64,000 bases of DNA, from IMG/VR virus record IMGVR_UViG_3300023184_000025, positions 1 through 64,000 of that record, one strand, 5' to 3'. A program made the position numbers and the translations under genes. How positions within the stretch are numbered: the stretch's first letter is position 1; each line of letters begins with the position of its first letter. Below, in pieces: positions 7,355-63,557 of the stretch. The notes beneath the pieces were generated by a model, which saw only the letters and a program-made list of their open reading frames with translations, was not told the origin of the DNA and did no database searches.

Positions 7355-9602
7355 TATTAACTGTAGGTTGAGTTGTTTCTTGCACAGGCACGTTTATGTT
7401 TGTTTCAAAGTAAATTTCTCCATCCTTTACAACAACATTTATATTGCAATCAGCAAGACGGTCAAATAAAATTTTTCTACTTAACGGAACACGAATCAGC
7501 TCGTCAATTTTTCTACCCAATGGTCGAGCTCCCATTAATGGATCATATCCACGGTCAGCCAATAGTTCAACTGCTGGCTCTGTTAAAGTTAGTTTAATAT
7601 TTTTATTAACCAAACTAGTTTTTAGTTCATCGACAAATTTGATAACAATTTTCTTAATTGCTAGTTTATCAAGCTTGCCAAATTTACAGACTGCATCCAA
7701 GCGATTTCGTAATTCAGGTTTAAAAAACTCTTTAAAGGCACGATCATCTTCGCCAGTTTTTGCCATGTCTCCAAAGCCAATGTTATTACGTTCACTGTCA
7801 GCACTACCAAGATTACTGGTCATAATAACAATGGTATTTTTACAATCAACTGTTTTTCCGTTGCTACCTGTAATTTTTCCTTCATCAAGCAATTGTAGAA
7901 AGATGTTACTTACATCAGGGTGCGCTTTTTCTACTTCGTCAAATAATAATATCGAAAATGGGTGCTTGCTCAAGTCGCTAATTAATTTGCCACCACCAAG
8001 ATTGCCATCCTCAAACCCAACATAGCCTGGCGGTGCACCAATCAAACTTGATACAGTATGCTTTTCCTGATACTCACTCATGTCGTACTTGAGTAATGTC
8101 ATATCAAGGTATTCAGCCAACATACGTGCCAATTCAGTTTTACCTGTACCAGTTGGCCCCAAGAACAAGAAACTAGACATTGGTTTTCTTGTTGTATTAA
8201 TGCCAGCAAAACTTACATAGATACGATCTAGTACTGTGTCAATGACCTGGTCTTGACCGTATACTCGTTGTTTGATATTACTTTCAAGATCAATAATACG
8301 TGTGCTCTGTTGATTGGCCAAGTGATCCATTGGTACACCGGCAACACGACTGACCTGTTGCATAATTAACTCTTTTGTGACTGTTAATGTACCTGCATCC
8401 TTGACCCTTTCACGAGCACAGGCAGCATCAATTAAATCAATGCTTTTGTCGGGATTCTTTTTGTCATGAATGTAACGACCACTTAGTTCAACTGCTGATA
8501 TAATAGCATCTGTGTCAATCATCACATTGTGAAACTTTTCCAGTCGCGGACTGAGTCCAATAAGAATTTTTTCTGTAGTTTCTTTGTTTGGTTCGTCGAT
8601 ACTGAGTCGATAGAATCTACGCATCAACGCACGATCTTTTTCAAAGCTTTCGTAGTACTCTTCCCAGGTTGTGCTGGCCACAACTTTAAGTACACCTTTG
8701 GTAATTGCTGGCTTGATCATATTAGCAAAATCAAGCTGGCTTTGTCCTGAACTGCCTGCTCCACGCATGGTGTGTGCTTCGTCAATAAACAGCACACAAT
8801 TCTTTTTACTTTCTAATGCATCAATTACCTGTTTGAGTTTTTCTTCAAACTCGCCGCGATACTTTGATCCAGCTAGTAAACTTCCGATTTCCAAACTCCA
8901 CACTTCATGATCTCTAAGGAAACTAGGAACATCATTGTTGACAATTCGCTGTGCCAGGCCTTCAATGATGGCAGTTTTGCCCACACCCGGATCTCCTACC
9001 ATTAGCACGTTGGCTTTAAATCTACGTGCTAACACAGTGACCATTTCTTCAATGTCTTTTTCTCTGCCAATCACTGGTTCAAGTTGATCTTTTTTTGCCT
9101 GATCGGTAATGTTGGTACAATGTTCTTCAAGTATCTCTGTGGCCTGTTGATTGGTGATTTTAACATCGCCGTGTTTGTAATTCTGTTCCCAAAATTTTAC
9201 AAACTCTGCTTTTGTTACACCATATTTGAGCAAGAAGTAATGTGCATGACTATTGTTTTCACTCATAAGAGCAAGATAAAGATCAATGGTGGTAATTACT
9301 CGTCGACCGGTGAACAATACTTGTGTCAGCGCACGATTAAAAATACGTTCTAGTGCATTTGTTTTTCGAGGTTGTATATCTTCTTTACTACTGCGTAAGT
9401 TTGTCAAACTTTCTAGATACGCATTAAGTTCTGACTCAAGCATGTCTATTTCTAAACCAAAATTAATTAATACAGTTCTAAATGGATTGTATTGTAGCAA
9501 CGACAGTAGCAAATGCTCAGTTAACACATACTCGTGTTTTTTGTCTCGAGCAATTCTAACTGCCGCATCAATAATTTGTTCAATTTCGGGATTATTTTGC
9601 AT
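7311..9602 (-). CDS. clpA: ClpA-like Hsp100 AAA+ unfoldase
   Basis: Clp N-domain (EHLLL), two Walker A motifs (GDPGVGKT, GPTGTGKT), LFIDEAH, DMSEYQEKH, LIGAPPGYVG and a ClpP-docking IGF loop; no ClpB coiled-coil M-domain. Confidence 0.92.
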   Translation of the reverse strand: MQNNPEIEQIIDAAVRIARDKKHEYVLTEHLLLSLLQYNPFRTVLINFGLEIDMLESELNAYLESLTNLRSSKEDIQPRKTNALERIFNRALTQVLFTGRRVITTIDLYLALMSENNSHAHYFLLKYGVTKAEFVKFWEQNYKHGDVKITNQQATEILEEHCTNITDQAKKDQLEPVIGREKDIEEMVTVLARRFKANVLMVGDPGVGKTAIIEGLAQRIVNNDVPSFLRDHEVWSLEIGSLLAGSKYRGEFEEKLKQVIDALESKKNCVLFIDEAHTMRGAGSSGQSQLDFANMIKPAITKGVLKVVASTTWEEYYESFEKDRALMRRFYRLSIDEPNKETTEKILIGLSPRLEKFHNVMIDTDAIISAVELSGRYIHDKKNPDKSIDLIDAACARERVKDAGTLTVTKELIMQQVSRVAGVPMDHLANQQSTRIIDLESNIKQRVYGQDQVIDTVLDRIYVSFAGINTTRKPMSSFLFLGPTGTGKTELARMLAEYLDMTLLKYDMSEYQEKHTVSSLIGAPPGYVGFEDGNLGGGKLISDLSKHPFSILLFDEVEKAHPDVSNIFLQLLDEGKITGSNGKTVDCKNTIVIMTSNLGSADSERNNIGFGDMAKTGEDDRAFKEFFKPELRNRLDAVCKFGKLDKLAIKKIVIKFVDELKTSLVNKNIKLTLTEPAVELLADRGYDPLMGARPLGRKIDELIRVPLSRKILFDRLADCNINVVVKDGEIYFETNINVPVQETTQPTVNSDGYIILDQFKPRV

Positions 9603-19109: not shown

Positions 19110-19735
19110 ATTACTTTTACCCTTATGTCGTTTACTGCGTACTCTTGTGTGTATTCTGCGGGAGGTGCATCTATGCCCAGGGCCGCAGCCAGTCGTAGAT
19201 TGTTGTCCATTACAGGTTTATCATTGTATTTCCACCATGCGGCCAATATGTCTCGATTCTGGCTGCAAATGATCTGTGCCATGTTCTTTAAGTCTCGAAA
19301 ATACTCATGATAGTCAGGATATGTTATATCAAAATGCCCGCATTTGACCCACCAGCCCAGGCATGCGTCATCATTTCGATGCACAATTACAATGGGTGTT
19401 TCGGGGAATAGGTCGCGCAAATAGTCAATGTGATTTGAGAACACATGACTTTTGATAATACGCACACCCTTGGATTCTTTAAATTGAAATGGCTCAGCAA
19501 ATATTTCTTCTAGTTGCTGTCTGTTTAATGTTGTCAAATCCTCAGGCAGTGGGCTAATCATGCCTGGATCAAAGTACGCACCCAGATGCATGAGTTCCAT
19601 TTTGCCCGATGCATCATGATAGTAAGTCCATTCATCTCTATAGTCCGAACGATCAATGTCAGGACTATAGTAGATGTTTTTGACTACACTACTCCATTTT
19701 GAGCCCGGAGCACCGGCTACAAAGATATATTTCAT
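19106..19735 (-). CDS. Sulfotransferase-like protein
   Basis: FVAGAPGSKWSSV, IIKSH and IVIVHR motifs. Confidence 0.5.
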   Translation of the reverse strand: MKYIFVAGAPGSKWSSVVKNIYYSPDIDRSDYRDEWTYYHDASGKMELMHLGAYFDPGMISPLPEDLTTLNRQQLEEIFAEPFQFKESKGVRIIKSHVFSNHIDYLRDLFPETPIVIVHRNDDACLGWWVKCGHFDITYPDYHEYFRDLKNMAQIICSQNRDILAAWWKYNDKPVMDNNLRLAAALGIDAPPAEYTQEYAVNDIRVKVI

Positions 19736-20715
19736 TCTTTACTTAAATCAATTCGACTCAACACAGGAATAAATGCCGCACGTAATTCGTCCATTTGCTT
19801 TCGAAGCCCTGCAGGAGTCAACTCATCTTCAGCATAGAAAATAACATTGGCTTCTCTGTATTCTGCATATTCTCGGCTACGAACCGCGGCACTAAATTGT
19901 TGTTGATACCAGGCAACAATTTCTCGATCTGTCCCAGGAGGCAATTGTATACTCCAGGCCGCATATACATTGATGCCAGGGGCAATGGTGTTCAACAACG
20001 GGACACCAGGAAACTGTGCCATCTTTTGTGTGCCTGTGAACCCAATAGGCTTTACCTTGCCTGCGTCAACCAGAGATTTGGCCACTGTAATCGGTATAAT
20101 AGCAAATTCAGTACCTGTTTTGCCGTCATAACTTGCGGCACTGGTTACTGCTGGCATAGGGCCGTTGAACCTTACAGGATTAACCATGTCTCTATTGCCT
20201 TTTCCTTTGTCCATCAAGTATTCATATGCTGTGCGATGTGCTCCACCGCCGACTGCAATATTAATTGTTCTGCCTGACTGAATATACTTCACAAACTCCT
20301 GTGGAGTATTAACACCGCTCTTGACACCGGCCACTAATACCAATGGTGATTTGCCCATGGTCAACACATCAATGAATGAGTCGTAATTGTATTTCTTTAT
20401 ATTCTTTTCCCAAATATCATTTGTTACATAACTGCTCATGTGGCTGGGCAAGTTAATAGTATGGCCGTCATTGACTGCTTCCAAAAACCGGTTGTTGGCA
20501 ATAACCGAATCGGCTCCGGGAATGTTTTGCACAACATAAACAAATTTAGGGTTTTGTTTCTGTACAATATCCGCCAGTTTACGAAAGGCCATTTCATTGC
20601 CAGCACCGGGTGTGTTACCAATATACACAGTGACAGGCTTAGTTGGTTCCCATGCGTGAACTAGTGTGCTTGCAGTAACAAGCAATAAAGCAACAAACTT
20701 TTTTAATGTACTCAT
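19732..20715 (-). CDS. Bug/TctC tripartite tricarboxylate transporter substrate-binding protein
   Basis: Signal peptide (AHA-like) then WEPTKPVT...PGAG, V.N.PGA, DGHT and P.VP...PG...W....PPGT. Confidence 0.85.
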   Translation of the reverse strand: MSTLKKFVALLLVTASTLVHAWEPTKPVTVYIGNTPGAGNEMAFRKLADIVQKQNPKFVYVVQNIPGADSVIANNRFLEAVNDGHTINLPSHMSSYVTNDIWEKNIKKYNYDSFIDVLTMGKSPLVLVAGVKSGVNTPQEFVKYIQSGRTINIAVGGGAHRTAYEYLMDKGKGNRDMVNPVRFNGPMPAVTSAASYDGKTGTEFAIIPITVAKSLVDAGKVKPIGFTGTQKMAQFPGVPLLNTIAPGINVYAAWSIQLPPGTDREIVAWYQQQFSAAVRSREYAEYREANVIFYAEDELTPAGLRKQMDELRAAFIPVLSRIDLSKE

Positions 20716-44109: not shown

Positions 44110-44943
44110 TTACTGGTCAACTGGTATTTTACAAACCGGAATTGGTTCCATTTTGTGCAAATTTCGGGCACGTATAGCACGGTATGCTTTGAGCTTTTTC
44201 TTTTCTTGTGTATTATCAACACCTGAATTGGTTTCTGCCTGTGTCATAGCCAACTCTAATTCCGGATAAGTCATGCCCAATTGATCTTCATCTGTGCGGC
44301 CATCTGTCCATAATCCGTCTGTGGGTGCCGCATCAATAATTTCCTGAGGCAAACCAAATTCACGACCCATGTCCCACACCGCAGTTTTCATGCAGTCACC
44401 AATTGGGCTGATATCCACTCCACCATCGCCGTATTTGGTAAAGAATCCCACACCAAAGTCTTCTACACGATTACCTGTGCCCACTACAATACCACCATGG
44501 CTTTGTGCAATTTGGTACAAGGTCATCATGCGCAGTCTAGCACGTGAGTTGGCAAATGCAAGATTAACCCTTTGTTCATCTACATTTTCTCTACAGTAGG
44601 GTATGAGATTTTTTTCAAATGAATCAAAAACTTTGGTCAAGTCCATGCTCATGTGTGTGACTGTTTCCTTGTGGCGTTCCAGCAACCAATCTGCCTGCAT
44701 TGAGCTACAATTATCTAGTTTCTTGTTTTGCCTAATTGGCATTTGTACCACAATGGTTCGGAGTCCGGTGTTGGCACAAAGTGCGCTGACAACTGAGCTG
44801 TCAATGCCTCCTGAAATACCAACAACTAAAGTATCAACTTTGGCACTACGAGCGTAGTCTTTGATCCACTTGGTAATGTGTTTAATGCGTTGCTTGGGTG
44901 TCATTCGATCTCCGGTGGTGGCATGCTCTTGAGTGTATCCCAC
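44110..44943 (-). CDS. nadE: NH3-dependent NAD+ synthetase
   Basis: VGISGGIDS, N.RARLRM, VVGTGN, GFFTKYGDGGVD, PTDGLW and DEDQLG motifs. Confidence 0.92.
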   Translation of the reverse strand: MGYTQEHATTGDRMTPKQRIKHITKWIKDYARSAKVDTLVVGISGGIDSSVVSALCANTGLRTIVVQMPIRQNKKLDNCSSMQADWLLERHKETVTHMSMDLTKVFDSFEKNLIPYCRENVDEQRVNLAFANSRARLRMMTLYQIAQSHGGIVVGTGNRVEDFGVGFFTKYGDGGVDISPIGDCMKTAVWDMGREFGLPQEIIDAAPTDGLWTDGRTDEDQLGMTYPELELAMTQAETNSGVDNTQEKKKLKAYRAIRARNLHKMEPIPVCKIPVDQ

Positions 44944-46425: not shown

Positions 46426-46450
46426 AAAAAAGCGGCCTCTAGGGCCGCTT
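46426..46450 (-). terminator. Rho-independent terminator
   Basis: AAGCGGCC-N5-GGCCGCTT followed by a T-run on the minus strand, downstream of 46470..46829. Confidence 0.8.
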
Positions 46451-46469
46451 GTTAATACAAGCATTGCGC

Positions 46470-46829
46470 TTATACTTGGGCTTCAGGAGCCTTTGCTTCT
46501 GTTTTTGCAACAGGAGCCTTGGTTGCCACAGTCTTTGCAGACTTTGCAGTTACCTTGATCTCGCCTTTCTTGGCAAGCTTGGTCTTCTCAGACAGCTTGT
46601 TAGCTACAGCATAGCTGGCATCACCAGTATAGCCTTGCGTGTCTTGCAAGAACTGCAGAGCTTGCAGTTTTGTCATGGGCAAGGGCAGTTCCATCAAATT
46701 GATGTTAGTGCATCCTGCCTTGTTGAGGATCTTGATGCGAGCGACCAAGTCGTTAGCAAAGCGAGCCTTTGTGGTACCGTCTGCGTTAGTTGCGGTACCT
46801 GCTACTGTAAAAAGTTTAGATTCTGACAT
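46470..46829 (-). CDS. Hypothetical basic protein, possibly DNA-binding
   Basis: K.RFAND..R.K.L.K.G...I.L.ELP..MTK with Lys/Ala-rich tail; own promoter and terminator. Confidence 0.7.
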   Translation of the reverse strand: MSESKLFTVAGTATNADGTTKARFANDLVARIKILNKAGCTNINLMELPLPMTKLQALQFLQDTQGYTGDASYAVANKLSEKTKLAKKGEIKVTAKSAKTVATKAPVAKTEAKAPEAQV

Positions 46830-46936
46830 TGTGTTGCCTTTCGGAGTTGCCTGTTAAGTTAAAGTTTGTATGCTGTTTTATCAGCATATCATTAGTATAG
46901 CAAAAAAGGGTTTTTGTGTCAACCTTTTCTGCTACA

Positions 46937-46986
46937 TTTGAGCAAGTAAATGTGTTGTTTTTTTGCAACACATTTACCCGCTCAAA
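46937..46986. repeat. Long inverted repeat containing a TGTTG-N8-CAACA box
   Basis: TTTGAGC-AA-GTAAATGTGTTG-N8-CAACACATTTAC-CC-GCTCAAA. Confidence 0.8.
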
Positions 46987-47047
46987 ACTGGTTAATTTTT
47001 TGTCCATGTATGTATTATAGCACGAATCAATTAATTGGTCAACCATT

Positions 47048-47467
47048 TTATTGGTAGTCTTTGTCCAATTTGACATTGGTTAAACCTGCAATGGTTTGGA
47101 AACGATCCCAGGCATCCTGGGCCGCAGGGTTACGGGTTAGTTCACTGCTGGGAAGTACTGCTTCTAACCAAATCTCTGGGCGACGGCTTGGATGCGCACC
47201 AAACTTGCGAGGTTGGTGTAACTTGCCTTGTTCCCAAAGTTCAATGCTAACACTACGAAATTTAGCTTCATCTTCGTCTGAATAGTGCGCCCATTCAGGA
47301 TTGCTCCACCCACTTCTCAAATGGTATCCTGACCAAATACCTGTCCATTGTTCATCATCATGAGGATCAAAATCCGTGCGACTGATGATAATCAAAACGT
47401 CGTTGATGTCTACTCGACCGTCTACAATATCTCGAACACAACGACTATAACTAAGTCCAATTTTCAT
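47048..47467 (-). CDS. Hypothetical phage protein
   Basis: IGLSYSRCVRDI and GKLHQPR motifs. Confidence 0.65.
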   Translation of the reverse strand: MKIGLSYSRCVRDIVDGRVDINDVLIIISRTDFDPHDDEQWTGIWSGYHLRSGWSNPEWAHYSDEDEAKFRSVSIELWEQGKLHQPRKFGAHPSRRPEIWLEAVLPSSELTRNPAAQDAWDRFQTIAGLTNVKLDKDYQ

Positions 47468-47473
47468 AATATG

Positions 47474-47896
47474 TTACCAACTAGAATTATAAAATACTTT
47501 GAGTCCCATGAACAACTCAGCTCGAGCGTTCCGTATAAATTCAAGATCAAGATCTTGATAGTGGTCATCTGCGTCGTTGCCAAAAAAGAATCCTGATGTA
47601 CCCGGTAATGTACCTGCAATGACATCAAGCTCAAGTCGTTCTAAATCATCATAAGTTAACTCAAGTTCAATACCATTAAAGGTGTTGCCATCCTGATTGC
47701 CACCGTTGCGTTGATTCCATAACTGTTCCATCCAACCATGCAGGTTAGGGTGCTTGCGCCAGTAGGCAAGTTCACGTGGTTTAGATACCACCTTGTTGAC
47801 AAAATCCCTAGAATCTTGGTCAAATTCGGCACCCTCGTAAAACTCACTTTGTTGGCCAGCCCTTGCGGCCACGTATGCGTACATATCAAGTCCCAT
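47474..47896 (-). CDS. Hypothetical phage protein (MGLD...YWRK family)
   Basis: MGLDMY, YWRKH..LHGW, GFFFG and Y.SSW motifs. Confidence 0.7.
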   Translation of the reverse strand: MGLDMYAYVAARAGQQSEFYEGAEFDQDSRDFVNKVVSKPRELAYWRKHPNLHGWMEQLWNQRNGGNQDGNTFNGIELELTYDDLERLELDVIAGTLPGTSGFFFGNDADDHYQDLDLEFIRNARAELFMGLKVFYNSSW

Positions 47897-47907
47897 GCTG
47901 GTGCTCC

Positions 47908-48249
47908 TTATCTAATTGCAATTGCATTTTCGTCACGTCGATTGCTGTAATAACGATGACCGATTCTGCGAATGGTATCTGCGGCCATCTGCGGATCAGC
48001 ATCAAACATATCCTGAACGTCATCTTTGGTAATGCCTTCTTGAGCATTAAAAATATAAATTTCGTAGTGTCGTTGACTATTATAACGTGCTCTGAGTTCA
48101 AGGTGCATTAGATTGGGAATCCTTACAGTATCGGGTTCACCTTTTAGTGCGGCCCAAACTTTAGCGCCTTGTGTTTCCGTAATGTCAATCAAAGTTTCAA
48201 GACCATAACAGTCCCACATGGCTAGAAATTGATGATCTTTGGGATTCAT
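47908..48249 (-). CDS. Hypothetical phage protein
   Basis: WDCYGLE and LRARYNSQRHYEIY motifs. Confidence 0.65.
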   Translation of the reverse strand: MNPKDHQFLAMWDCYGLETLIDITETQGAKVWAALKGEPDTVRIPNLMHLELRARYNSQRHYEIYIFNAQEGITKDDVQDMFDADPQMAADTIRRIGHRYYSNRRDENAIAIR

Positions 48250-48494
48250 AGATGAAACTTTTTCAAATAGTTTTTGGCCAAGGTCAAATCTTCTTTGTTA
48301 ATGGTATTGATGGTTTCATCAACTAGTTCTAGTAGAATTAGGCGCATGAGTGTTTCGCTCATTTCTCGTTCTTCAAGATCCAAAGTTGCCTGCCAAGCTT
48401 CTATGTCCTCATAGTGTTCAAGGCTCCACATTATGTCCAGCATTTCAACCTGACGACCAGTGAGATTACTAATATTAATATCTTTATCAAACAT
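48246..48494 (-). CDS. Hypothetical protein
   Basis: 82 aa, coupled to neighbouring genes. Confidence 0.6.
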   Translation of the reverse strand: MFDKDINISNLTGRQVEMLDIMWSLEHYEDIEAWQATLDLEEREMSETLMRLILLELVDETINTINKEDLTLAKNYLKKFHL

Positions 48495-49225
48495 TATAAC
48501 ACCTTGACACGATTGAGTTGGGTTTTGTTGTCACGGTGAGCTTTTACAGTACCAACCAATTTGATTTGGATGCCCGAATTCAGCTGAGATTTGTAGCTGA
48601 AAAACAAGGCTCGATTATCTTGAGTAATTGCAGTAACCCAAAAAATGTTGTATGTGTTGCTCCAATTGGCACTTACAACTTCTGCGTCCAATGCTACTTT
48701 GTCGCTGACATTGCCAACATAGCCGCCGCTGGCATTGCGTACACGATCCTGGATTGATTGGCGCACCAATGCACGTTGGTGGCTCTGTGGCAAACATGCA
48801 ACCACAGCCAGTTCCAGGCGATGTTGTACTGAGTCAAATTCTTCTTCAACAGCTACAACTTTACTGACGCTTGCATCAAATGCACTTAGCTGACCTTTGA
48901 GCGCACGGAAGGTAAGGTCATTTTGCAAGAACCTACGGCACTCCTGCCCAATCACACGATCCTCGTCGGTGATGGAGCCGGGTACAGCCAGGAAGTCCAT
49001 CATAATGTCACGATTGCGCTTCTTGATAGTTTCATGAGTACCATCTTCAGTGATATTAATTTTATCTTCTTTGAGATATTCTCCGTTGACACGTTGTGCC
49101 GCTACAGCCGCACCCCAAACATCATCAACAGAATACTTAAATGAATTCACTGTGGCTTTGGTGCGACGAACACCATAACGAGGATTGTAACCATTTGCTG
49201 GGGTAAAATAAGTCTTGGGATTCAC
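48494..49225 (-). CDS. Hypothetical protein with C-terminal OB-fold-like domain
   Basis: C-terminal VG.V..K...GTVKAH...TQLNRVK pattern. Confidence 0.55.
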   Translation of the reverse strand: MNPKTYFTPANGYNPRYGVRRTKATVNSFKYSVDDVWGAAVAAQRVNGEYLKEDKINITEDGTHETIKKRNRDIMMDFLAVPGSITDEDRVIGQECRRFLQNDLTFRALKGQLSAFDASVSKVVAVEEEFDSVQHRLELAVVACLPQSHQRALVRQSIQDRVRNASGGYVGNVSDKVALDAEVVSANWSNTYNIFWVTAITQDNRALFFSYKSQLNSGIQIKLVGTVKAHRDNKTQLNRVKVL

Positions 49226-49237
49226 GGTGTCTCCTGT

Positions 49238-49645
49238 TTACTTAACTAATACGTAGGGCTTGCTCCACTCACCAATATTCAAGTGAATGTAAAAAGCGGT
49301 GTCAAAATAATCTGTCATTGCATCACTGCGGTCGTACCACTGACGCTCGGGTGAAGTTTTAATGATACGCAAGAACTGATCGATTGCGTCCTTGGCTTCG
49401 CCAGTAAAATGATCTTGGAACCAGTAGGGGTTAATCTGCATGTAACCTTCTGCAAGACGACTGTCAACATGACGGTGATCTATGGTCTGATTGTGATTTT
49501 CAAAGAAATCAATAGGACCAGATTTAACAGTGACTTCAACGCTGAGCGAACCACTGCCTTTACGGGCACTGAATTTAAACTTGGGGAATTGTGCTTTGAG
49601 TGCTTCGCGAATTGACTTGACTTCTTGTGCTCCGATGTATGCCAT
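49238..49645 (-). CDS. Hypothetical early protein (LPD29-like)
   Basis: IR.ALK..FP..KFS.R and DRSDAMTDYFD motifs. Confidence 0.6.
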   Translation of the reverse strand: MAYIGAQEVKSIREALKAQFPKFKFSARKGSGSLSVEVTVKSGPIDFFENHNQTIDHRHVDSRLAEGYMQINPYWFQDHFTGEAKDAIDQFLRIIKTSPERQWYDRSDAMTDYFDTAFYIHLNIGEWSKPYVLVK

Positions 49646-49712
49646 TTTCTGCTCCTGTTTTGTTAGTGTATGTGTATATTATAGCAAATTGGGAATTATT
49701 GGTCAACCAAAA

Positions 49713-49964
49713 TCAATTGGCCATCAAATTGATTTGGACCTGGTGACCTTCGTGTGTAATCACGGTGCCCACTGGCCGGCCTTCGCCCAGAACTGGACTA
49801 CGACGACGAATTTCCGCCAGATACTCCACAGCATATCGCAGAGCCGCACCATGTGATACTGTGGCTGTTTTTGTAAAAACATCGTTGATGGTTGCGTACA
49901 TACCAAATCCGTCAATGATAAAACGAATTCGGGTGCTGTTGCTAAAACCAGATACATGACGCAT
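49713..49964 (-). CDS. Hypothetical protein
   Basis: 83 aa with Shine-Dalgarno (GAAAGGA). Confidence 0.55.
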   Translation of the reverse strand: MRHVSGFSNSTRIRFIIDGFGMYATINDVFTKTATVSHGAALRYAVEYLAEIRRRSPVLGEGRPVGTVITHEGHQVQINLMAN

Positions 49965-49976
49965 TTTGCTTTCCTT

Positions 49977-50240
49977 TCAGCGGCTGAGATTCATAACACG
50001 GGCATCAAATTCCATGAAGCTGACTTCAAATGGAACCGATACTTCTTTGCCAACACGGCCAGCATCTTCGGCATCGCTCCAGCTGTCTTTGGTTACTACA
50101 ATCACAAAACAATCGTAGCCACGGTTGTCAATTTTTTGAACAACACCTTCAACAAAACAATCTTCGCGGCCTACCATGGGTTTGAAGTCATATGCACGGA
50201 TTGTGTCGCCAACTCGGGCAATTTTTGCAAATTTTAACAT
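49977..50240 (-). CDS. Hypothetical protein
   Basis: Likely start MLKF after AGGAG; VGD.IRAYDF motif. Confidence 0.6.
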   Translation of the reverse strand: MLKFAKIARVGDTIRAYDFKPMVGREDCFVEGVVQKIDNRGYDCFVIVVTKDSWSDAEDAGRVGKEVSVPFEVSFMEFDARVMNLSR

Positions 50241-50302
50241 ACCAGCTCCTTTTTGTTTACTATACAAGTATTATAGCAAAATGGGCAATTCTGGTCAACC
50301 AG

Positions 50303-50551
50303 CTATTTCTGCGACTTTTTTAAGCAGAAAAACGTGGCATCTACTGTGTTGCGAAAATACAACAGAACTTTTAACTCTGATTTTCTGCCTTTTCTGCGCC
50401 ATTCTTCGTTGAGAAATTGCACACGATAAAACCAACGTCGACCTGCTTGGGTACCCGGGAGGCCAAACATCTCGGTGGCTGTTGCCACAGCACCAACCTT
50501 CCAATCATCGGTCCAACTAATTTTACCGCCATCAACTCGTGTGGTTTTCAT
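50303..50551 (-). CDS. Small hypothetical protein
   Basis: W..A.E.FGLPG...RW...F....DA..F pattern. Confidence 0.5.
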   Translation of the reverse strand: MKTTRVDGGKISWTDDWKVGAVATATEMFGLPGTQAGRRWFYRVQFLNEEWRRKGRKSELKVLLYFRNTVDATFFCLKKSQK

Positions 50552-50847
50552 TAGTCACCTGAATCAATTTGATAACGATCGCCACAGTGGACACAATCAT
50601 AATTGGTCAAACATCGCCCGGCATTACTGCTTTGATAATGGTGGGTGCATGGATCACCTTGTGAGTTCAATCGGACTTTGCCACGTGGAGTGCCAAACAT
50701 GTACTGACCGCCACAATTAGAACAGCCCAGGGTGTCTGTGTCTTTGTCGTATCCAGAGTATACGTGTTTGTATTTTTGTTGCTCGAGACTCGGTGTCACA
50801 CGACCGGAGCCGTTGCACACAGGACAAGTTCTGTATTCTACTGTCAT
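50551..50847 (-). CDS. Zinc-finger-like protein
   Basis: CPVCNGSG, CSNCGG, C.H and CVHC motifs. Confidence 0.65.
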   Translation of the reverse strand: MTVEYRTCPVCNGSGRVTPSLEQQKYKHVYSGYDKDTDTLGCSNCGGQYMFGTPRGKVRLNSQGDPCTHHYQSSNAGRCLTNYDCVHCGDRYQIDSGD

Positions 50848-50856
50848 TTTATTTCC

Positions 50857-51165
50857 TTACGCAACCAACCACAACAGTTCTTCTTTGACTTCAATGCTTT
50901 CGCTACCGTCGTACTCGTGTATTCTAAATTCAGCACCTACGTCAAGCCAGGCAATTTCTAGATCTCTCATGCCACCATCATAGATGTCAGGATATTTGAG
51001 GCTAACATAAACTGCTAATTCATCCCATTGTTCTTTTTCTACAAAATCTACAATCACAGGATTAAACAACAGCTCGGGCAACTCTTGATTCCAAGTTGAC
51101 CAACCAGCACCAAAGCCGGGTGAGTATAATACTGCTACTTTACCGTCTCTGATTATTTTTTTCAT
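50857..51165 (-). CDS. Hypothetical phage protein
   Basis: VAVLYSPGFGAGWSTW and EYDGSE motifs. Confidence 0.7.
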   Translation of the reverse strand: MKKIIRDGKVAVLYSPGFGAGWSTWNQELPELLFNPVIVDFVEKEQWDELAVYVSLKYPDIYDGGMRDLEIAWLDVGAEFRIHEYDGSESIEVKEELLWLVA

Positions 51166-51344
51166 TATTTGACTCCAAAATGTTCTTTGATCTGCATCAT
51201 AGCATCGTCATAGCCATTTAGATACAAGTTAGACATGCATTCTCTCACAATCAACTCGGCAAACTGTTCATAATCAAAATATAGTACAGTACCTTTATCA
51301 CAAACCTTGCATTGACTGTGCAATTGTCGAATTCGGTCGTTCAT
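51165..51344 (-). CDS. Small hypothetical protein (59 aa)
   Basis: Hand-translated MNDRIRQL...FAELIVREC...IKEHFGVK*. Confidence 0.6.
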   Translation of the reverse strand: MNDRIRQLHSQCKVCDKGTVLYFDYEQFAELIVRECMSNLYLNGYDDAMMQIKEHFGVK

Positions 51345-51574
51345 TCTACAATTCCTACACTTTTCTTAATCTCATAACGAGCAATCTTCTCGTCAAAGTA
51401 CATGCGAGTACCTTCATTGAAAGGGCTCGCTACCACAATCTCGCCTAGCTCTGTGGCTAATAATTGTGCAAAGCGAGCAAGAATACTCTGAGTGTCTTCC
51501 ATCTGGTCCATGGGGTCTCGGTCCAGAATCACTTGGTAATCATTAATGAGTTTTTGTACGTTCTGATGAATCAT
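51341..51574 (-). CDS. Hypothetical protein
   Basis: Likely start MIHQNVQKL with GGAG upstream. Confidence 0.5.
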   Translation of the reverse strand: MIHQNVQKLINDYQVILDRDPMDQMEDTQSILARFAQLLATELGEIVVASPFNEGTRMYFDEKIARYEIKKSVGIVE

Positions 51575-51715
51575 TTTAGACTCCGGTATGCAAAGGGTTA
51601 CGTCGACGCAGGTGGGCCAGTGCCCCTTCCTTGGTTTCAAAACGTCCTGAGATGGGCGTTTGATGTGCGCCACGCACAATGTACCAACCACCTAGCAAAG
51701 CATTATATACGACTT

Positions 51716-51976
51716 TCATACTGCCTCCGCTGTTTTAGGAAAACGATCATAAGCCTCACTGGCTCCGTCACATGAGAATTTGCTAGAGCCAAACTGATTG
51801 ATCACATGCACAAGGATGTCATCATAAGCGGCCCACTCAATGCACTCTTTGCGAGCTGTTTGATAGTTATTTGTTGTCAACAAAATTTGACGCCCGAATA
51901 CATCTATGACAGCATCTTCCTTGGATGATACTTTAGTTACTACTCGATATTTGTAAGGCATGTTACCGTATCGCAT
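51716..51976 (-). CDS. Hypothetical protein
   Basis: Likely start MRYGNM after GGAG. Confidence 0.5.
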   Translation of the reverse strand: MRYGNMPYKYRVVTKVSSKEDAVIDVFGRQILLTTNNYQTARKECIEWAAYDDILVHVINQFGSSKFSCDGASEAYDRFPKTAEAV

Positions 51977-51977
51977 A

Positions 51978-52256
51978 TCAATTGCTCCAAAATGCTTCGC
52001 TGTCAACTCGGCAAGCCCAAGGTGTATCAGCGTCGATTTCCACAGGAACACCTGTCATTAAATTACGAACAGTGATCTTGGGTGCGGTGTAAGTGTCACG
52101 GCTCACAATGTTCAATTGGCTTTCGTTCCAACCTGCTTTGTTGCAAAGACGGGTGCGAGTTGCTTTGGCGGCACCAAAAGTTTTGTATGCACGGGTTCGG
52201 TTGGGACCGTCAGTAACAATTAAACCAGTACCTTTTGAGACGATTACGTATGACAT
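51978..52256 (-). CDS. Hypothetical early protein
   Basis: Own promoter and AGGAG; V.NLMTG...I..DTP..C motif. Confidence 0.65.
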   Translation of the reverse strand: MSYVIVSKGTGLIVTDGPNRTRAYKTFGAAKATRTRLCNKAGWNESQLNIVSRDTYTAPKITVRNLMTGVPVEIDADTPWACRVDSEAFWSN

Positions 52257-52311
52257 ATCTAACTCCTTTTTAATTACTATACAAGTATTATAACAGATCG
52301 GAATTTATTGG

Positions 52312-52665
52312 TCAATCTAACCGTGAACCTGCGTAAACACGATCCAGACCCAGCTTGTTCTTCAGTACTTCGGCATAGGCTTCTGCACCCGCTTCCAAGA
52401 TGCTGATGCTTTGGGTAGGATAACCGCTGGGATTCCACATGCACAAGGAGCCGGTGTAGTCTTTACGGAAGCCGTGAGCCTGAAGTGCTTTGCCAATCTT
52501 GCTGTTAGAACGAACACCCCAAACGTTGACCCAGGCAAACCCACAGGCATCACGATCACCGTGTTTTGCATAAAACGCCTTGGCGGCTGTACGGGCGGCC
52601 ATTGCGGCTTCGTTGCAAGCGTCCTGGACTGCTTCTACATTTACTACTGTTGCGATTGCCTTCAT
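52312..52665 (-). CDS. Hypothetical early protein
   Basis: CGFAWV, QS....EAGA.AYA..L and SRLD motifs; own promoter. Confidence 0.7.
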   Translation of the reverse strand: MKAIATVVNVEAVQDACNEAAMAARTAAKAFYAKHGDRDACGFAWVNVWGVRSNSKIGKALQAHGFRKDYTGSLCMWNPSGYPTQSISILEAGAEAYAEVLKNKLGLDRVYAGSRLD

Positions 52666-52801
52666 TTCAAACTCCTTTTTAATTACTATGCTGTTATTAT
52701 AACAAATTGGGTATTTTTGGTCAACCGTTTTGTGTGTTGTGAAAAAACAACACTTTCTGTCTATTTTTTAAGCAGATTTAGTGTTGTTTTTACGCAACAG
52801 T

Positions 52802-53203
52802 TTAAAGCTCAATGGCTCTGCGGAACAGGATTTCTTGCTTGGAAAATGCTTGGATTTCCCAAGGCTGTTCCAGATACGGAACCCGGCGTCCGTAGTACTT
52901 GCCTTTCCACAGTTTGCCACGTGGAGTTAACTGTAGTGTGCCTTTGGCAAATTGTGCAACATGGGTGAGCTCGTGTGCTAGAGTGGCGCCCATGGCCTGC
53001 AGATCTTTAACAGGCTTGAGCACAACCAAATAGGTGTCCAGACCTTTGAGAGGAACTGTGGTACCCAGGTCTTCAAGATCAGGGTCTAATATGATGTGCA
53101 GGAGTTTTTTATGTTTTGTGAGCTTCAACTGCTCTATCATAGAAGGTAGAAGTGATTCTACGTATTTTCTAGATTTAGTGGTGCCTTCAACATAAAATTC
53201 CAT
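52802..53203 (-). CDS. HExxH zinc metallopeptidase-like protein
   Basis: TLAHELTHVAQ...Y.EQPWE.QA. Confidence 0.75.
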   Translation of the reverse strand: MEFYVEGTTKSRKYVESLLPSMIEQLKLTKHKKLLHIILDPDLEDLGTTVPLKGLDTYLVVLKPVKDLQAMGATLAHELTHVAQFAKGTLQLTPRGKLWKGKYYGRRVPYLEQPWEIQAFSKQEILFRRAIEL

Positions 53204-53304
53204 GCATTACTCCTTGTTGCTATAACTTCTATTATAACAAACCAGGGAATTCCAGTCAACCAGCTATTTCTGCTTAATTTTTAAGCAGTTTTTGGGTGTT
53301 GTTT

Positions 53305-54006
53305 TTACGCAACAAAATCTATGTAACCAGATTCAGCAGTCCAGTCCATAGTTGACAATTTCTTTGCAATAGCAGTCAGTGTTTCTTCTTTAGAAAACTC
53401 TGAATTCTTTTTAATCCAACGTTGGTGGTTCTTTGCCAACACATCAATGTTGTTTGTCCAACCTTGTTGCTGTAGGTTGTTGACAAAATTTTCTTTAAAC
53501 AACAAATTAAAATTAATGTTTTTACCGTAGGTATTTGCAACACGATCGTACATGGTCTGCATCCATAATCTTTTTGATTGTTCAAACCAATACGAAGCGG
53601 CTTTTTCAAACTTTCCATTGAGGCAAAGAGTTTTAGCTATCTCAAACCAAGATTCGCCAGGTGCCACTTTAATTGCAAGTTTTTGTAGTTTCATTTGTCT
53701 TAGAACAACTTGTTCTTGCACTTGTGGATCAGTGACTATAATATTAATTAATGACCAGTTGCTGTTGATAATTGGCTCAAATAAATGTGTGCTAACAAAT
53801 CCATTTGGGGGTGTTGGCAATTGTTGAACAGCATCTTCCACAGACATTTCGTTGTCTTGTATTTTTCTTTCAAACTTTTTTAAAGAATAGTCAGAGGGAA
53901 CACTGATACCAGACATGCGAGTTAACAAAATACCATTGCAACTGGTCACAAATAAATCACCGGCGGTGCCTCCGTTGTAGGAAACAAAAGTATAATCAGT
54001 ATTCAT
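53305..54006 (-). CDS. Hypothetical protein, weakly sulfotransferase-like
   Basis: Likely start MNTDY; FVSYNGGTAGDLF...STH. Confidence 0.4.
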   Translation of the reverse strand: MNTDYTFVSYNGGTAGDLFVTSCNGILLTRMSGISVPSDYSLKKFERKIQDNEMSVEDAVQQLPTPPNGFVSTHLFEPIINSNWSLINIIVTDPQVQEQVVLRQMKLQKLAIKVAPGESWFEIAKTLCLNGKFEKAASYWFEQSKRLWMQTMYDRVANTYGKNINFNLLFKENFVNNLQQQGWTNNIDVLAKNHQRWIKKNSEFSKEETLTAIAKKLSTMDWTAESGYIDFVA

Positions 54007-55027
54007 TTTTATGTTTGCAGATATGAGAAAGCCAACTGGGATTCCAGCGATCAATTAAATCCTTCTGTAACTGTCCTGTGGCCAGTTGTTTAATCAAATC
54101 CTCTGTGTCTAGACTGATCACCGTCAAAAACAATTCAGGGTCTCTGTAAGGATCTAGTATTTGAAAATCACCAAACCATTGCTGGAACGTTGGTCTCGAA
54201 TGCAATTTAACAATTGCTGATCTCAATAAATTAACATTGTCAAATGTATGCTCAGGGCCATATGTTGCAGTATCGTAACAGTCAAATTTTTGATCAACTA
54301 ATTTTGAAGATTGTGCGTACAGTTCACCGTGATGCAAGAGTGCCAGATCGCCGTAGTATCCTGTGACCAAGTTGTTAATATTGTAAAATGCCGGCTTGAC
54401 ATTGTCTATCTGACTATACGGATAATCTATTGTTTCTTGAGTGTCACTGTAGACCACGTCAAATGGAAGTTTGTTAAAATAAGACCTTGTGTGATTGGCC
54501 ACAACTCCAGTAAACTCAACCTGATGATGCAATGCCAAAAACGCAAGAGTACTGGAGTCAAGTCCGCCCGAGAATGCAATCTGTGTTTTATCACTGATGT
54601 TTGCGCAAGTTTGTAAATTAGACAACAACCTTAGCTCAATGTCAACAAGTACCTGTTCCCAAGTTTTAATTTCAGGAACAATAGCAGATTTGATTTTTTT
54701 ATACTGTAACCAATTGATTCCCAGCTCGTCGTGACAATTAAATTTAACCGTCAACGGAGATATTGCTGTGTCTATGTACTTGTTAATATTGGTAAGAATA
54801 ATGCCTTTGCCAAACCCAAGATTAAAATCTTTATAAAAACTAAACTCAACTGTGACTTCTTCGTCACCAAACTCAAACTCAACAAAGTTTCCACCGTGCT
54901 CGCCTAAACGATAACCAAAAAATTTATCTTGATTAATATTATAGTAGGCATTAACCCAAAGATGAGGGGCTAGTTGATGACGATATGGGAACTCTGTGAG
55001 CTCTTGTTCAGCGATGCAAAAGTACAT
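53996..55027 (-). CDS. Asparagine-synthetase-like (PP-loop) protein
   Basis: IAFSGGLDSS, VTGYYGD and PYRD motifs. Confidence 0.65.
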   Translation of the reverse strand: MYFCIAEQELTEFPYRHQLAPHLWVNAYYNINQDKFFGYRLGEHGGNFVEFEFGDEEVTVEFSFYKDFNLGFGKGIILTNINKYIDTAISPLTVKFNCHDELGINWLQYKKIKSAIVPEIKTWEQVLVDIELRLLSNLQTCANISDKTQIAFSGGLDSSTLAFLALHHQVEFTGVVANHTRSYFNKLPFDVVYSDTQETIDYPYSQIDNVKPAFYNINNLVTGYYGDLALLHHGELYAQSSKLVDQKFDCYDTATYGPEHTFDNVNLLRSAIVKLHSRPTFQQWFGDFQILDPYRDPELFLTVISLDTEDLIKQLATGQLQKDLIDRWNPSWLSHICKHKNEY

Positions 55028-57620: not shown

Positions 57621-58187
57621 TTAAATGTCCTTGTAAAAGATATGACGTCCAATTTTTGTTACACGTTTTTTGTTCCACTGCGGGTTTACATAGTCTGCAT
57701 GATAGTAAAGTGCATCTTTAAGTTCAGGCAGTCGGAATCCATCAATCATGACCATCTTGGCGGCTTCAGCACTCTCATCCCATAGCTTTTTATGAACAGG
57801 CTTGGTTTTGAAATTCTGCTCACAGTACCATGAGAATTGGCAAAGCACTCGTTCATAAATTACGTTCTTTTGGTGAACTACCTGACACGGATCACTAGGA
57901 AATTTTCCGCTTTCTACACGATTCATAACCACCTGTGCTACTGCCAGCTTTCCTTCTGCTGGTTCGCTGGCAGCTTCCCAGTAGACATTCTGTGTCATAC
58001 ATTGTAGTTTGCGTTCTTTTTCTTTAAGAGCTGTTTTAAAAGCCCCAATTGAGCCTACTTCTCCAAAATTAACATTGGTCAGGCTATCGAGTTTGTTTTG
58101 GACCACTGTAGTAACTAGTCCTATGCCAAATAAGGCAATTATCAAAAATATTGACAAATTAACTGTCATTTTGATATATTTTGTCAT
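57621..58187 (-). CDS. Cell wall hydrolase (SleB / Hydrolase_2 family), membrane-anchored
   Basis: C...NVYWEA..E...G..AVAQVVMNRV, CQFSW, YYHADYVNP.W and IGRHIFY motifs. Confidence 0.9.
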   Translation of the reverse strand: MTKYIKMTVNLSIFLIIALFGIGLVTTVVQNKLDSLTNVNFGEVGSIGAFKTALKEKERKLQCMTQNVYWEAASEPAEGKLAVAQVVMNRVESGKFPSDPCQVVHQKNVIYERVLCQFSWYCEQNFKTKPVHKKLWDESAEAAKMVMIDGFRLPELKDALYYHADYVNPQWNKKRVTKIGRHIFYKDI

Positions 58188-63287: not shown

Positions 63288-63557
63288 TTAGACTAAACCA
63301 AGGGCCAGAGCCTTGTAACCAGCGGCAACAATCTTGCGGCTTGGCTTGCCGAGTGCGTACTCGGTAACACGAATGCCATTACCGGCTGTGCGGCTGTTGG
63401 CATAAACAGCAAAGCCGTTTTGGCGGATGCGGCTTACTTCAGCACCCAAGTTACCAACGCCAAAGCGTTTCTTGGCCTCAGCTGGGCTGAGTGTTTCACC
63501 GCTTTGCAAGGCGCGGAAGACCTTGTAAGTTTTAGTAGTTTCGTTAAAATGTTTCAT
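63288..63557 (-). CDS. Winged helix-turn-helix DNA-binding protein
   Basis: L..G..LS...A..RFGV.N..A.VS.IR..G..VY pattern. Confidence 0.72.
   Translation of the reverse strand: MKHFNETTKTYKVFRALQSGETLSPAEAKKRFGVGNLGAEVSRIRQNGFAVYANSRTAGNGIRVTEYALGKPSRKIVAAGYKALALGLV

What the first reader, a model, noticed from the sequence alone, without database searches (positions are those of the whole stretch)
46953..53314. Two recurrent palindromic boxes upstream of early promoters
TGTTG-N8-CAACA occurs five times (46953-46970, 50347-50364, 52735-52752, 52782-52799, 53297-53314). CTG[C/T]-N11-GCAG with a TTTTTAAGCAG half occurs three times (50309-50327, 52757-52775, 53270-53288). All lie just upstream of -35 boxes, and two copies overlap gene ends. 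Fixed spacing with variable A/T cores indicates sites for dimeric DNA-binding proteins, i.e. a two-factor regulon. Candidate binders are the wHTH (63288), the AbrB-like protein (45425) and 46470..46829.
Basis: partly seen in the sequence, partly recalled or inferred. Interest (0 to 1): 0.65.

Follow-up and report, generated by a model that had tools for sequence, protein, structure and literature searches.

The report
Conserved dyad box upstream of phage promoters
An 18-bp palindrome (TGTTG-N8-CAACA) sits about 10 bp upstream of the -35 box of some strong early promoters in an uncultured freshwater jumbo phage and its relatives; it is most likely a docking site for a dimeric DNA-binding protein inside mobile promoter cassettes, but no binder has been shown.

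Summary
Both boxes are at the stated coordinates. All genes and promoters here are on the minus strand, and the boxes lie upstream of near-consensus sigma-70 promoters.

**Box A (TGTTG-N8-CAACA) is real.**
- It occurs 6 times in the window against 0.25 expected, and 12 times in the 262-kb phage record against 1.6.
- Ten of those 12 have an A/T-rich core and lie within 60 nt upstream of a -35 box.
- It recurs in at least 120 IMG/VR contigs but only 6 times in 596 Gb of bacterial genomes.
- Its arms are near-invariant and the N8 spacing is kept, while core and flanks vary. The usual gap to TTGAC is 9-10 nt, which puts the centre near -54.
- No compensatory arm changes occur, and positions 6 and 13 pair no more often than chance. 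As RNA the hairpin is weak and usually lacks a U-tract.

These features fit a dimeric protein operator over the UP-element position better than a terminator.

**Box B is weaker.** Only the half CTGCTTAAAAA is conserved. It occurs three times in this genome and always accompanies box A.

**The setting resembles PeSL cassettes of T4-like phages.** One gene is an indel bounded by cassette repeats.

**No binder is shown.** The wHTH is the best candidate, the AbrB-like protein is unlikely, and the 119-aa protein remains open.

The parts
53297..53314 (-). Box A copy. It lies 37 nt upstream of the -35 of promoter 53259. The stop codon of ORF 53305-54054 sits in its core.
53270..53288 (-). Box B copy, a perfect 8-3-8 palindrome. 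It lies 10 nt upstream of the -35 of promoter 53259.
53231..53259 (-). Sigma-70-type promoter (TTGACT-17-TATAAT with TGn) driving the 133-aa gene 52802-53203.
52735..52799 (-). Composite A-B-A palindrome: box A 52782-52799, box B 52757-52775, box A 52735-52752. The proximal box A lies 10 nt from the -35 of promoter 52724. On the sense strand it folds as one long hairpin of -24.1 kcal/mol (z -4.9).
52696..52724 (-). Sigma-70-type promoter driving the 117-aa gene 52312-52665.
52296..52662 (-). Segment absent at this position in relatives G004 and G001. It holds the 117-aa gene plus one promoter cassette. The indel is bounded by a roughly 43-nt repeat of promoter and 5'UTR sequence.
50347..50364 (-). 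Box A copy, 49 nt upstream of the -35 of promoter 50298, inside the 3' end of ORF 50303-50551.
50309..50327 (-). Box B copy with only 4 bp of arm pairing, 10 nt upstream of the -35 of promoter 50298.
50270..50298 (-). Sigma-70-type promoter driving the 87-aa gene 49977-50240.
46937..46986 (-). Long palindrome (21-pair stem, -29.7 kcal/mol, z -6.4) with box A 46953-46970 at its centre. It lies between tandem promoters 47042 and 46922 and has no U-tract after it on either strand.
46894..46922 (-). Promoter (TTGACA-17-TATACT) of the 119-aa gene 46470-46829. Box A lies 31 nt upstream of its -35.
63288..63557 (-). wHTH protein (HTH_39) with a predicted homodimer. It is the best, but unproven, phage-encoded candidate binder. 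It is the last gene of a gene string headed by box-A-bearing promoters just beyond the window end.

Best explanation
Box A is a dyad-symmetric operator, consensus (G)TGTTGY-(A/T)6-RCAACA(C). A dimeric sequence-specific DNA-binding protein probably recognises it, and no binder has been identified.

Its preferred slot ends 9-10 bp upstream of the -35 hexamer. Counting the T of TTGACA as -35, that is about -63 to -46, centred near -54. Its A/T-rich core therefore coincides with the distal UP-element position, and the A-rich spacer that follows coincides with the proximal one.

Binding there would modulate a subset of near-consensus sigma-70 early promoters, roughly 10 of at least 43 in this genome. 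The most likely routes are competing with or assisting the RNA polymerase alpha C-terminal domains, or insulating a promoter from read-through coming from the gene directly upstream.

Box B is an accessory element that occurs only beside box A and can occupy the same -46 slot.

Both boxes are optional modules of repeated promoter cassettes: stop codon, box, A-rich spacer, -35, conserved spacer, extended -10, conserved 5'UTR with Shine-Dalgarno. These cassettes recombine and move genes, as PeSLs do in T4-like phages.

Shown: existence, enrichment, conservation pattern, position, and one cassette-bounded indel. Inferred: protein binding, its direction of effect, and the identity of the binder.
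For: Enrichment and promoter association:
- Searches give the enrichment.
- All 10 A/T-core copies in the genome lie within 60 nt upstream of a minus-strand consensus promoter.
- In five near-complete relatives, every TGTTGY...RCAACA copy with an A/T-rich core lies 8-55 nt upstream of a consensus promoter, with two exceptions: G005:309579 and a copy inside a conserved coding region (G001:40665).

Sequence rather than pairing is conserved:
- Arm positions carry 1.4-2.0 bits, while the 5' flank carries about 0.1 and the core 0.5-1.3.
- Among all perfect 5-bp inverted repeats beside the -35, the TGTTG arm dominates, with 26 of 28 at N8, and no compensatory arm variants exist.
- Single-mismatch variants mostly break pairing (TGTGG, AGTTG, TGTAG, CCACA).
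- Positions 6 and 13 are Watson-Crick in 116 of 203 sites, against 116.5 expected if independent.
- The core occurs in both orientations, as expected for a symmetric dimer.

Spacing is held despite sequence divergence:
- 85 of 112 sites have a 9-10 nt gap with unrelated spacer sequences.
- In the set not selected by gap, 31 of 57 lie at 6-14 nt with a mode of 10.

The element is specific to phages: at least 120 viral contigs against 6 hits in 596 Gb of bacterial genomes.

The hairpin is weak as RNA and has no U-tract on the sense strand.

A dimeric wHTH is encoded in every relative. Its homodimer model scores 0.58 against a best control of 0.01. That mark was reached by 21 of 30 known homodimers and 0 of 23 monomers; the runs agree in at least 93% of contacts and pLDDT is at least 87.
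Against: - No binding protein is identified, and there are no binding or expression data. No RNA runs hold this phage.
- Nearly half of the sites lie 20-110 nt from the -35 with no helical periodicity.
- These promoters are already near-consensus with an extended -10, so they should not need an activator.
- A site centred at -54 is a poor position for a classical repressor.
- The palindrome extends outward more often than chance: 2 or more extra pairs in 37 sites against 12.7 expected.
- Two window copies are embedded in long stable palindromes, which hints that nucleic-acid structure matters at least sometimes.
- Cassette spread by recombination could carry arm sequence and spacing along by descent.
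- One orthologous site has N6 instead of N8.
Confidence: 0.45

Rival explanations
1. PeSL-type stem-loop. The boxes act as nucleic-acid hairpins at the 3' end of the upstream transcript, as attenuator, processing site or 3'-end stabiliser. Together with the promoter they also act as homology patches for recombination that shuffles small early genes. On this view the sequence conservation of the arms is inherited as cassettes spread.
For: - The boxes sit between the stop codon of one gene and the promoter of the next, often abutting the stop.
- Published PeSLs have this architecture, and their stem-loop consensus differs between phage groups (PMC2839356, PMC4122927).
- The 117-aa gene is an indel bounded by cassette repeats.
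- Metagenome contigs break and join exactly at the cassettes.
- Two window copies form long stable hairpins of -24 and -30 kcal/mol.
- Outward palindrome extension is enriched, and a minority of sites are followed by a T-run.
Against: - A typical box A stem has only 5-7 A/U-rich pairs with an 8- or 6-nt loop.
- Most copies are followed by an A-rich, not U-rich, tract on the sense strand.
- There are no compensatory arm changes and no covariation at positions 6/13.
- Most single-mismatch variants break pairing.
- The gap to the -35 is held at 9-10 nt even though spacer sequences differ, which a terminator or recombination patch does not require.
- Box B copies 2 and 3 pair over only 3-4 bp.
- Joints in metagenome contigs may be assembly artefacts at repeats (caveat given).
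Confidence: 0.25
2. Factor-independent UP element or curved DNA. The A/T-rich core and the A-rich spacer are simply the distal and proximal UP subsites contacted by RNA polymerase alpha subunits. The TG/CA-rich arms only tune DNA bending and have no dedicated binding protein.
For: - With the modal 10-nt gap, the core spans about -58 to -51 and the A-rich spacer about -45 to -38. This matches the positions of the UP subsites; the position calculation uses, and the UP-element positions come from established knowledge of E. coli rrnB P1.
- A-rich orientation on the sense strand is preferred 27:11.
- Box B, also with a central A-tract, occupies the same slot.
- Promoters without box A also tend to be A-rich at positions 5-13 upstream of TTGAC.
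Against: - UP elements do not need invariant G/C-containing inverted arms, yet the arms are the most conserved part, at about 2 bits.
- Many box A copies lie 20-110 nt upstream, outside the reach of an UP element.
- At orthologous positions the box is swapped for a G/C-rich ACCCTAC element.
Confidence: 0.15
3. Box A is the site of a host transcription factor or nucleoid protein that the phage exploits, rather than of a phage protein.
For: - The motif is conserved across phages whose proteins are only 40-60% identical. A conserved host factor would explain this.
- No classical Cro/CI-type HTH or HU/IHF gene is found in five genomes.
Against: - The composite of box plus GGTTGAC is at chance level in 185,579 bacterial species genomes, with 6 hits in unrelated taxa.
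- The host is unknown; the TctC-based search returned nothing.
- By my own recall, no known regulator motif matches. CRP is 5-N6-5, LexA is CTGT-N8-ACAG and the TyrR box is TGTAAA-N6-TTTACA.
Confidence: 0.1

Closest known systems
PeSLs (promoter-early stem-loops) of T4-like phages (Arbiol et al. 2010, PMC2839356; Comeau et al. 2014, PMC4122927)
   Same: - Repeated intergenic cassettes made of a strong sigma-70-like early promoter, an A/T-rich tract upstream of the -35, and a palindrome further upstream.
- They are concentrated among small genes of unknown function.
- They are associated with gene indels between close relatives.
   Different: - PeSL stem-loops are stable (G-run/C-run, or A3-4G3-loop-C3T3-4) and were shown to terminate transcription.
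- Box A is a short A/T-rich dyad with invariant arm sequence, fixed N8 spacing, no U-tract and a fixed distance to the -35.
- This phage is not demonstrably T4-like. There is no Gp23 or MotA hit, although the Gp23 search was uninformative.
Operators of dimeric phage regulators placed upstream of promoters, such as phi29 p4 sites, Mu Mor/C sites and Aca operators at anti-CRISPR promoters (from my own knowledge; Aca: PMC12658196, seen)
   Same: An inverted repeat with an A/T-rich centre close to the promoter, recognised by a small dimeric DNA-binding protein that sets the timing of phage genes.
   Different: - In those systems the binder is known.
- The sites either overlap the core promoter (repression) or serve promoters that lack a good -35 (activation).
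- Here the promoters are near-consensus and the site is centred near -54.
UP elements of strong bacterial and phage early promoters (own knowledge)
   Same: A/T-rich sequence between about -40 and -60 of very strong promoters.
   Different: UP elements have no conserved G/C-containing inverted arms, and they do not occur at -70 to -140.
Start-associated sequences of Cluster K mycobacteriophages (PMC3203893, listed; details from my own knowledge)
   Same: Short conserved intergenic repeats of unknown binder that recur next to many genes of one phage clade.
   Different: Those repeats sit next to translation starts and are not palindromic boxes upstream of sigma-70 promoters.

Membership tests
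PeSL cassette (T4-like phages) | Repeated near-consensus sigma-70 early promoter in intergenic regions | tested here: met
   43 strong promoters, all on the minus strand, many sharing the spacer and 5'UTR.
PeSL cassette (T4-like phages) | Stable stem-loop upstream that terminates or attenuates transcription | tested here: not met
   - A typical box A has a 5-bp stem and an 8-nt loop.
- Boxes A and B together give only -11 kcal/mol, with no U-tract on the sense strand.
- Only the composite palindromes 52735-52799 and 46937-46986 are stable.
- Termination itself cannot be tested here.
PeSL cassette (T4-like phages) | Cassettes flank genes that are inserted, deleted or replaced between close relatives | tested here: met
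   - The 117-aa gene plus its promoter is an indel against G004 and G001, bounded by a roughly 43-nt cassette repeat.
- Different genes follow the orthologous cassette in different relatives.
- Contig joints cluster at the cassettes (with an assembly caveat).
PeSL cassette (T4-like phages) | Host genome is a T4-like myovirus | tested here: inconclusive
   - There is no Gp23 (PF07068) hit, but the record is 76% complete and the control rang nowhere.
- There is no MotCF hit in four genomes.
Dyad-symmetric operator of a dimeric DNA-binding protein | Two inverted half-sites conserved in sequence at fixed spacing, with a freely varying centre | tested here: met
   Arms carry 1.4-2.0 bits, 26 of 28 sites are N8, and the core varies and flips orientation.
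Dyad-symmetric operator of a dimeric DNA-binding protein | Conservation of sequence rather than of base pairing | tested here: met
   - No compensatory arm variants exist.
- Pairing at positions 6/13 equals the expectation under independence, 116 against 116.5 of 203.
- Outward extension is, however, mildly enriched.
Dyad-symmetric operator of a dimeric DNA-binding protein | Constrained position relative to the regulated promoter | tested here: inconclusive
   The mode is a 9-10 nt gap (85 of 112; 31 of 57 at 6-14 nt). The other 26 of 57 are scattered at 20-110 nt.
Dyad-symmetric operator of a dimeric DNA-binding protein | A cognate protein binds the site | not testable with these tools
   There is only a candidate: the wHTH at 63288-63557 with a predicted homodimer (score 0.58 against a best control of 0.01).
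Intrinsic (Rho-independent) terminator | G/C-rich stem followed by a U-tract on the transcribed strand | tested here: not met
   - The arms hold 2 G/C pairs.
- The 3' flank on the sense strand is A-rich in most copies.
- The scan lists two boxes only on the non-coding strand.
T4 MotA box (middle promoter) for box B | TGCTT box about 12 nt upstream of a -10 element, plus a MotA activator gene | tested here: not met
   There is no -10-like hexamer at the right distance in any copy. There is no MotCF homologue in four genomes.
LexA/SOS box for box B | CTGT-N8-ACAG, 16 bp (own knowledge) | tested here: not met
   Box B is CTG-N13-CAG, 19 bp, and its right half is not conserved.

The most novel reading that the evidence does not exclude
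Box A is the operator of the phage's own dimeric wHTH protein (63288-63557 and its orthologues). That protein is made from a box-A-headed early operon. It docks over the UP-element position of about ten early promoters and switches them down, or insulates them, once it accumulates.

This would be an autoregulated early-gene circuit conserved across a large clade of uncultured freshwater jumbo phages. It would be built into mobile promoter cassettes, so that any gene captured by a cassette is automatically wired into the circuit.
Probability: 0.15. Interest if true: 0.6.

Novelty: new variant of a known kind. Interest (0 to 1): 0.45.

Why it matters
Regulation of early genes in jumbo phages that rely on host RNA polymerase is poorly known, and these freshwater phages are uncultured.

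A short, sharply defined and strongly conserved dyad at a fixed distance from consensus promoters gives a concrete handle:
- It predicts a specific DNA-protein interaction that can be tested in vitro with synthetic DNA and one or two recombinant proteins.
- It marks early promoters in metagenomic contigs of this clade.
- It shows that PeSL-like mobile promoter cassettes are not restricted to T4-like phages and can carry operator-like modules.

If instead the element works as a hairpin, it would be an unusually weak and sequence-constrained one, which would also be informative.

Tried and rejected
- **Intrinsic terminator.** Rejected for the typical box: weak stem and no U-tract on the sense strand.
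- **MotA box reading of box B's TGCTT.** Rejected: no MotCF homologue and no correctly spaced -10.
- **LexA, CRP and TyrR-type boxes.** Spacing or half-sites do not fit (own knowledge compared).
- **Host regulon.** The composite pattern is at chance level in bacterial genomes. A host search with the TctC-like protein found nothing.
- **Autoregulated downstream gene.** The genes behind box-A promoters are diverse: 140 unique proteins, largest cluster 8.
- **Box A as operator of the 119-aa gene.** The box is not conserved upstream of its orthologues in G001-G003.
- **Fold of the 119-aa protein.** The model has pLDDT 65, there is no PDB match at E <= 0.001, and the Atlas hits are unnamed viral clusters.
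- **PDB sequence searches for the wHTH and the AbrB-like protein.** Nothing useful.
- **Phage collection search by DNA.** No match. By protein, only distant hits to Agrobacterium and Sinorhizobium jumbo phages.
- **Expression data.** No RNA run holds this phage.
- **Co-occurrence of the three candidate binders.** All are present in all five relatives, so this is uninformative.
- **Literature search for the motif.** Nothing relevant.

Full report
**Context**

The window is bases 137,947-201,946 of a 262,308-bp IMG/VR virus record. The record has 40% G+C and CheckV estimates it as 76% complete. Near-complete relatives are 320-353 kb. The sequence occurs in lake and freshwater metagenomes from several studies. 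It has no close match among deposited phages and only distant protein similarity to Agrobacterium and Sinorhizobium jumbo phages.

In the region of the finding all plausible genes are on the minus strand. A strict search for TTGAC.-N16-18-TA[TC]A[AC]T finds 43 promoters in the genome, all on the minus strand. Many share an almost identical spacer, an extended -10 and a 5'UTR with Shine-Dalgarno sequence.

**Check of the observation**

All five TGTTG-N8-CAACA sites and all three CTG[C/T]-N11-GCAG sites are at the stated coordinates.

Box A is strongly enriched:
- 6 in the window against 0.25 expected.
- 12 in the genome against 1.6 in my shuffles, and 2 for the reversed control.
- Ten of the 12 have an A/T-rich core with Y at position 6 and R at position 13, and lie upstream of a consensus promoter on the gene strand.
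- The other two, including window 19901, have G/C-rich cores inside coding sequence and look like chance.

Box B as loosely written is not enriched: 8 against 3.3 expected. Its three copies do share the 11-mer CTGCTTAAAAA, which is found nowhere else in the genome.

The slot that ends 10 nt upstream of TTGAC is filled by box A once (52735) and by box B twice (50309, 53270). The other copies lie 31-57 nt upstream. Two boxes do overlap ORF ends.

**Comparative evidence for box A**

Loci around homologues of two local genes gave 363 non-redundant plus-strand promoters (369 counting both strands). Of the 369, 43 carry an exact box A within 120 nt upstream, and the most common gap is 10 nt.

- Among all perfect 5-bp inverted repeats ending 4-16 nt from the -35, the TGTTG arm is by far the commonest: 28 cases, 26 of them with N8. 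No alternative, compensatory arm pair recurs.
- The logo of 38 proximal sites shows 1.4-2.0 bits at the ten arm positions, Y at position 6, R at position 13, an A/T core, an uninformative 5' flank, and a 3' flank of C/A followed by A-rich sequence and GG before TTGAC.
- The core occurs in both orientations, A-rich on the sense strand 27:11.
It returned only 6 hits, in unrelated taxa, in 596 Gb of bacterial and archaeal genomes.
- All 112 non-redundant viral composites kept by my script also carry a -10-like hexamer (TA.A.T; TATAAT in 90) at 16-18 nt. The -10 was not part of the collection scan, but the script's filter required it. In 85 of them the gap is 9-10 nt, with unrelated spacer sequences.
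- In a set not selected by gap, 31 of 57 sites lie at 6-14 nt. The rest are scattered at 20-110 nt without periodicity.
- In five near-complete relatives, all but two of the copies with a Y/R A/T-rich core are upstream of a consensus promoter; the exceptions are G005:309579 and a copy inside a conserved coding region (G001:40665).

**Operator or hairpin?**

Evidence against a hairpin role:
- As RNA, a typical box A forms only a 5-bp stem with an 8-nt loop. Boxes A and B together reach -11 kcal/mol. No sense-strand copy in the window is followed by a U-tract.
- Positions 6 and 13 are Watson-Crick in 116 of 203 sites, exactly the expectation (116.5) if the two positions vary independently.
- Recurrent one-mismatch variants break pairing.

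Evidence for a hairpin role:
- Outward extension of the palindrome by 2 or more pairs is seen in 37 of 203 sites against 12.7 expected.
- Two window copies are embedded in long stable palindromes. The A-B-A unit 52735-52799 folds at -24.1 kcal/mol (z -4.9). The unit 46937-46986 folds at -29.7 kcal/mol (z -6.4).
- One orthologous site has N6 instead of N8.

On balance, selection acts on arm sequence, spacing and distance to the promoter. This fits a dimeric DNA-binding protein better than a structural hairpin, although a structural contribution at some sites is not excluded.

With a 10-nt gap the box spans about -63 to -46. Its A/T core covers about -58 to -51 and the A-rich spacer about -45 to -38. 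These are the distal and proximal UP-element positions as established for E. coli promoters. A bound dimer would therefore sit where the alpha C-terminal domains dock.

**Box B**

Eleven non-redundant intergenic copies of CTGCT[T/G]AAAA were found in the fetched loci of relatives, including lineages related to G002, G003 and G004.
- All lie within 70 nt of a box A.
- They occur in either orientation and on either side of box A.
- The right half is degenerate, and the perfect palindrome occurs only in some copies.
- The copies at 50309 and 53270 belong to a roughly 45-nt segment that is nearly identical through the -35, so they are related by duplication.

Box B is therefore a real accessory element of box A, not an independent fixed-spacing palindrome.

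**Cassette context**

- Against the closest relative (G004, about 92% nucleotide identity), the 117-aa gene 52312-52665 with one promoter is an indel. Its two edges fall in a roughly 43-nt repeated promoter/5'UTR segment. G001 also lacks the gene here and carries it elsewhere.
- Downstream of the orthologous 133-aa gene, relatives carry one of three things before a promoter that drives different genes: box A, mismatched versions of it, or an ACCCTAC element. In some relatives nothing precedes that promoter.
- Metagenome contigs pile up on the promoter cassettes and break or join exactly there. This may partly reflect assembly at repeats.
- This architecture and behaviour match published PeSLs, except that PeSL stem-loops are stable proven terminators.

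**Candidate binders**

- **wHTH (63288-63557).** It matches HTH_39 above the cut-off, is 68-99% identical across relatives, and is the only HTH_39 gene per genome. HTH_3 and HU/IHF families are absent.
  - Its homodimer model passes the test: score 0.58 against a best control of 0.01. The mark was reached by 21 of 30 solved homodimers and 0 of 23 monomers. The runs agree in at least 93% of contacts and pLDDT is at least 87.
  - It ends a gene string headed by three cassette promoters just beyond the window. The first carries box A and the second a TGTGG variant.
- **AbrB-like protein.** It scores below the Pfam cut-off, has no arginine and carries a net charge of about -9, so DNA binding is unlikely.
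- **119-aa protein.** It has a Lys/Ala-rich tail and strong expression signals: tandem promoters, a 5' hairpin and a strong terminator at 46430-46450. It has no recognisable fold, and its upstream box A is absent in G001-G003.

**Verdict**

Box A is a genuine, clade-wide, phage-specific, promoter-linked dyad and is most likely a protein operator (confidence 0.45). A PeSL-like hairpin role (0.25), a pure UP-element role (0.15) and a host factor (0.10) remain possible. The 'two-factor regulon' idea is only partly supported. The finding is a new variant of known kinds, namely PeSL-like cassettes and phage operators, and is of moderate interest.

Noticed in passing
L009, L022, L070, L077 and others (relatives); one copy in the own genome near G000:C1:76290-76320: A second conserved promoter-linked element, (A)ATAACCCTAC. 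It occurs either as a hairpin ACCCTAC-N4-6-GTAGGGT just upstream of the -35, or as ACCCTAC-GG-TTGAC-AGGGT bracketing the -35. It was seen at 42 of 363 promoters. At orthologous positions it replaces box A.
   Followed up: partly
window 46430-47042: The 119-aa gene (46470-46829) looks built for very high expression. It has tandem consensus promoters (47042, 46922), a 21-pair palindrome between them, a 5'UTR hairpin and a strong terminator (46430-46450). The 5'UTR hairpin shows a compensatory change between relatives (ATGTTG/CAACAT against ATGCTG/CAGCAT). The protein has a conserved N-terminal domain of unknown fold and a Lys/Ala-rich tail.
   Followed up: partly
window 52296-52662: The 117-aa gene (phrog_22149) with its promoter is present here but absent at this position in relatives G004 and G001. 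G001 carries its homologue about 13 kb away.
   Followed up: yes
genome-wide; for example window 49678-49706, 50270-50298, 52287-52315: The 17-nt spacer between the -35 and -10 (AATAATTCCCAATTTGC-like) and the 5'UTR (…GTATAGTAA…AAAGGAG) are nearly identical among many promoters. This is unusual for sigma-70 promoters and suggests homogenisation by recombination or an extra recognition element.
   Followed up: no
G005:C1:309579-309596; L027:3415, L044:4910, L072:6001: Box A copies without a sigma-70 promoter, flanked by G-runs and C-runs and a conserved 'gcatgcaaaa'-like stretch. This is a different, unexplained context, possibly another promoter class or an origin-like region.
   Followed up: no
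window 7311-9602, 44110-44943, 19732-20715, 57621-58187: Auxiliary genes: a full-length ClpB-like AAA+ chaperone (763 aa), an NAD synthase (NadE-like), a TctC-family periplasmic solute receptor, and a cell-wall hydrolase (Hydrolase_2).
   Followed up: no
G000:C1:91696-91740 and 93271-93300 (outside the window): Two box-A-bearing promoters lie next to tRNA-like sequence and have no obvious protein gene downstream. They may drive tRNA or small RNA genes.
   Followed up: no
window 51243-51492: About 250 nt present in the window are replaced by about 40 nt in relative G004. This indel is not bounded by promoter cassettes.
   Followed up: no
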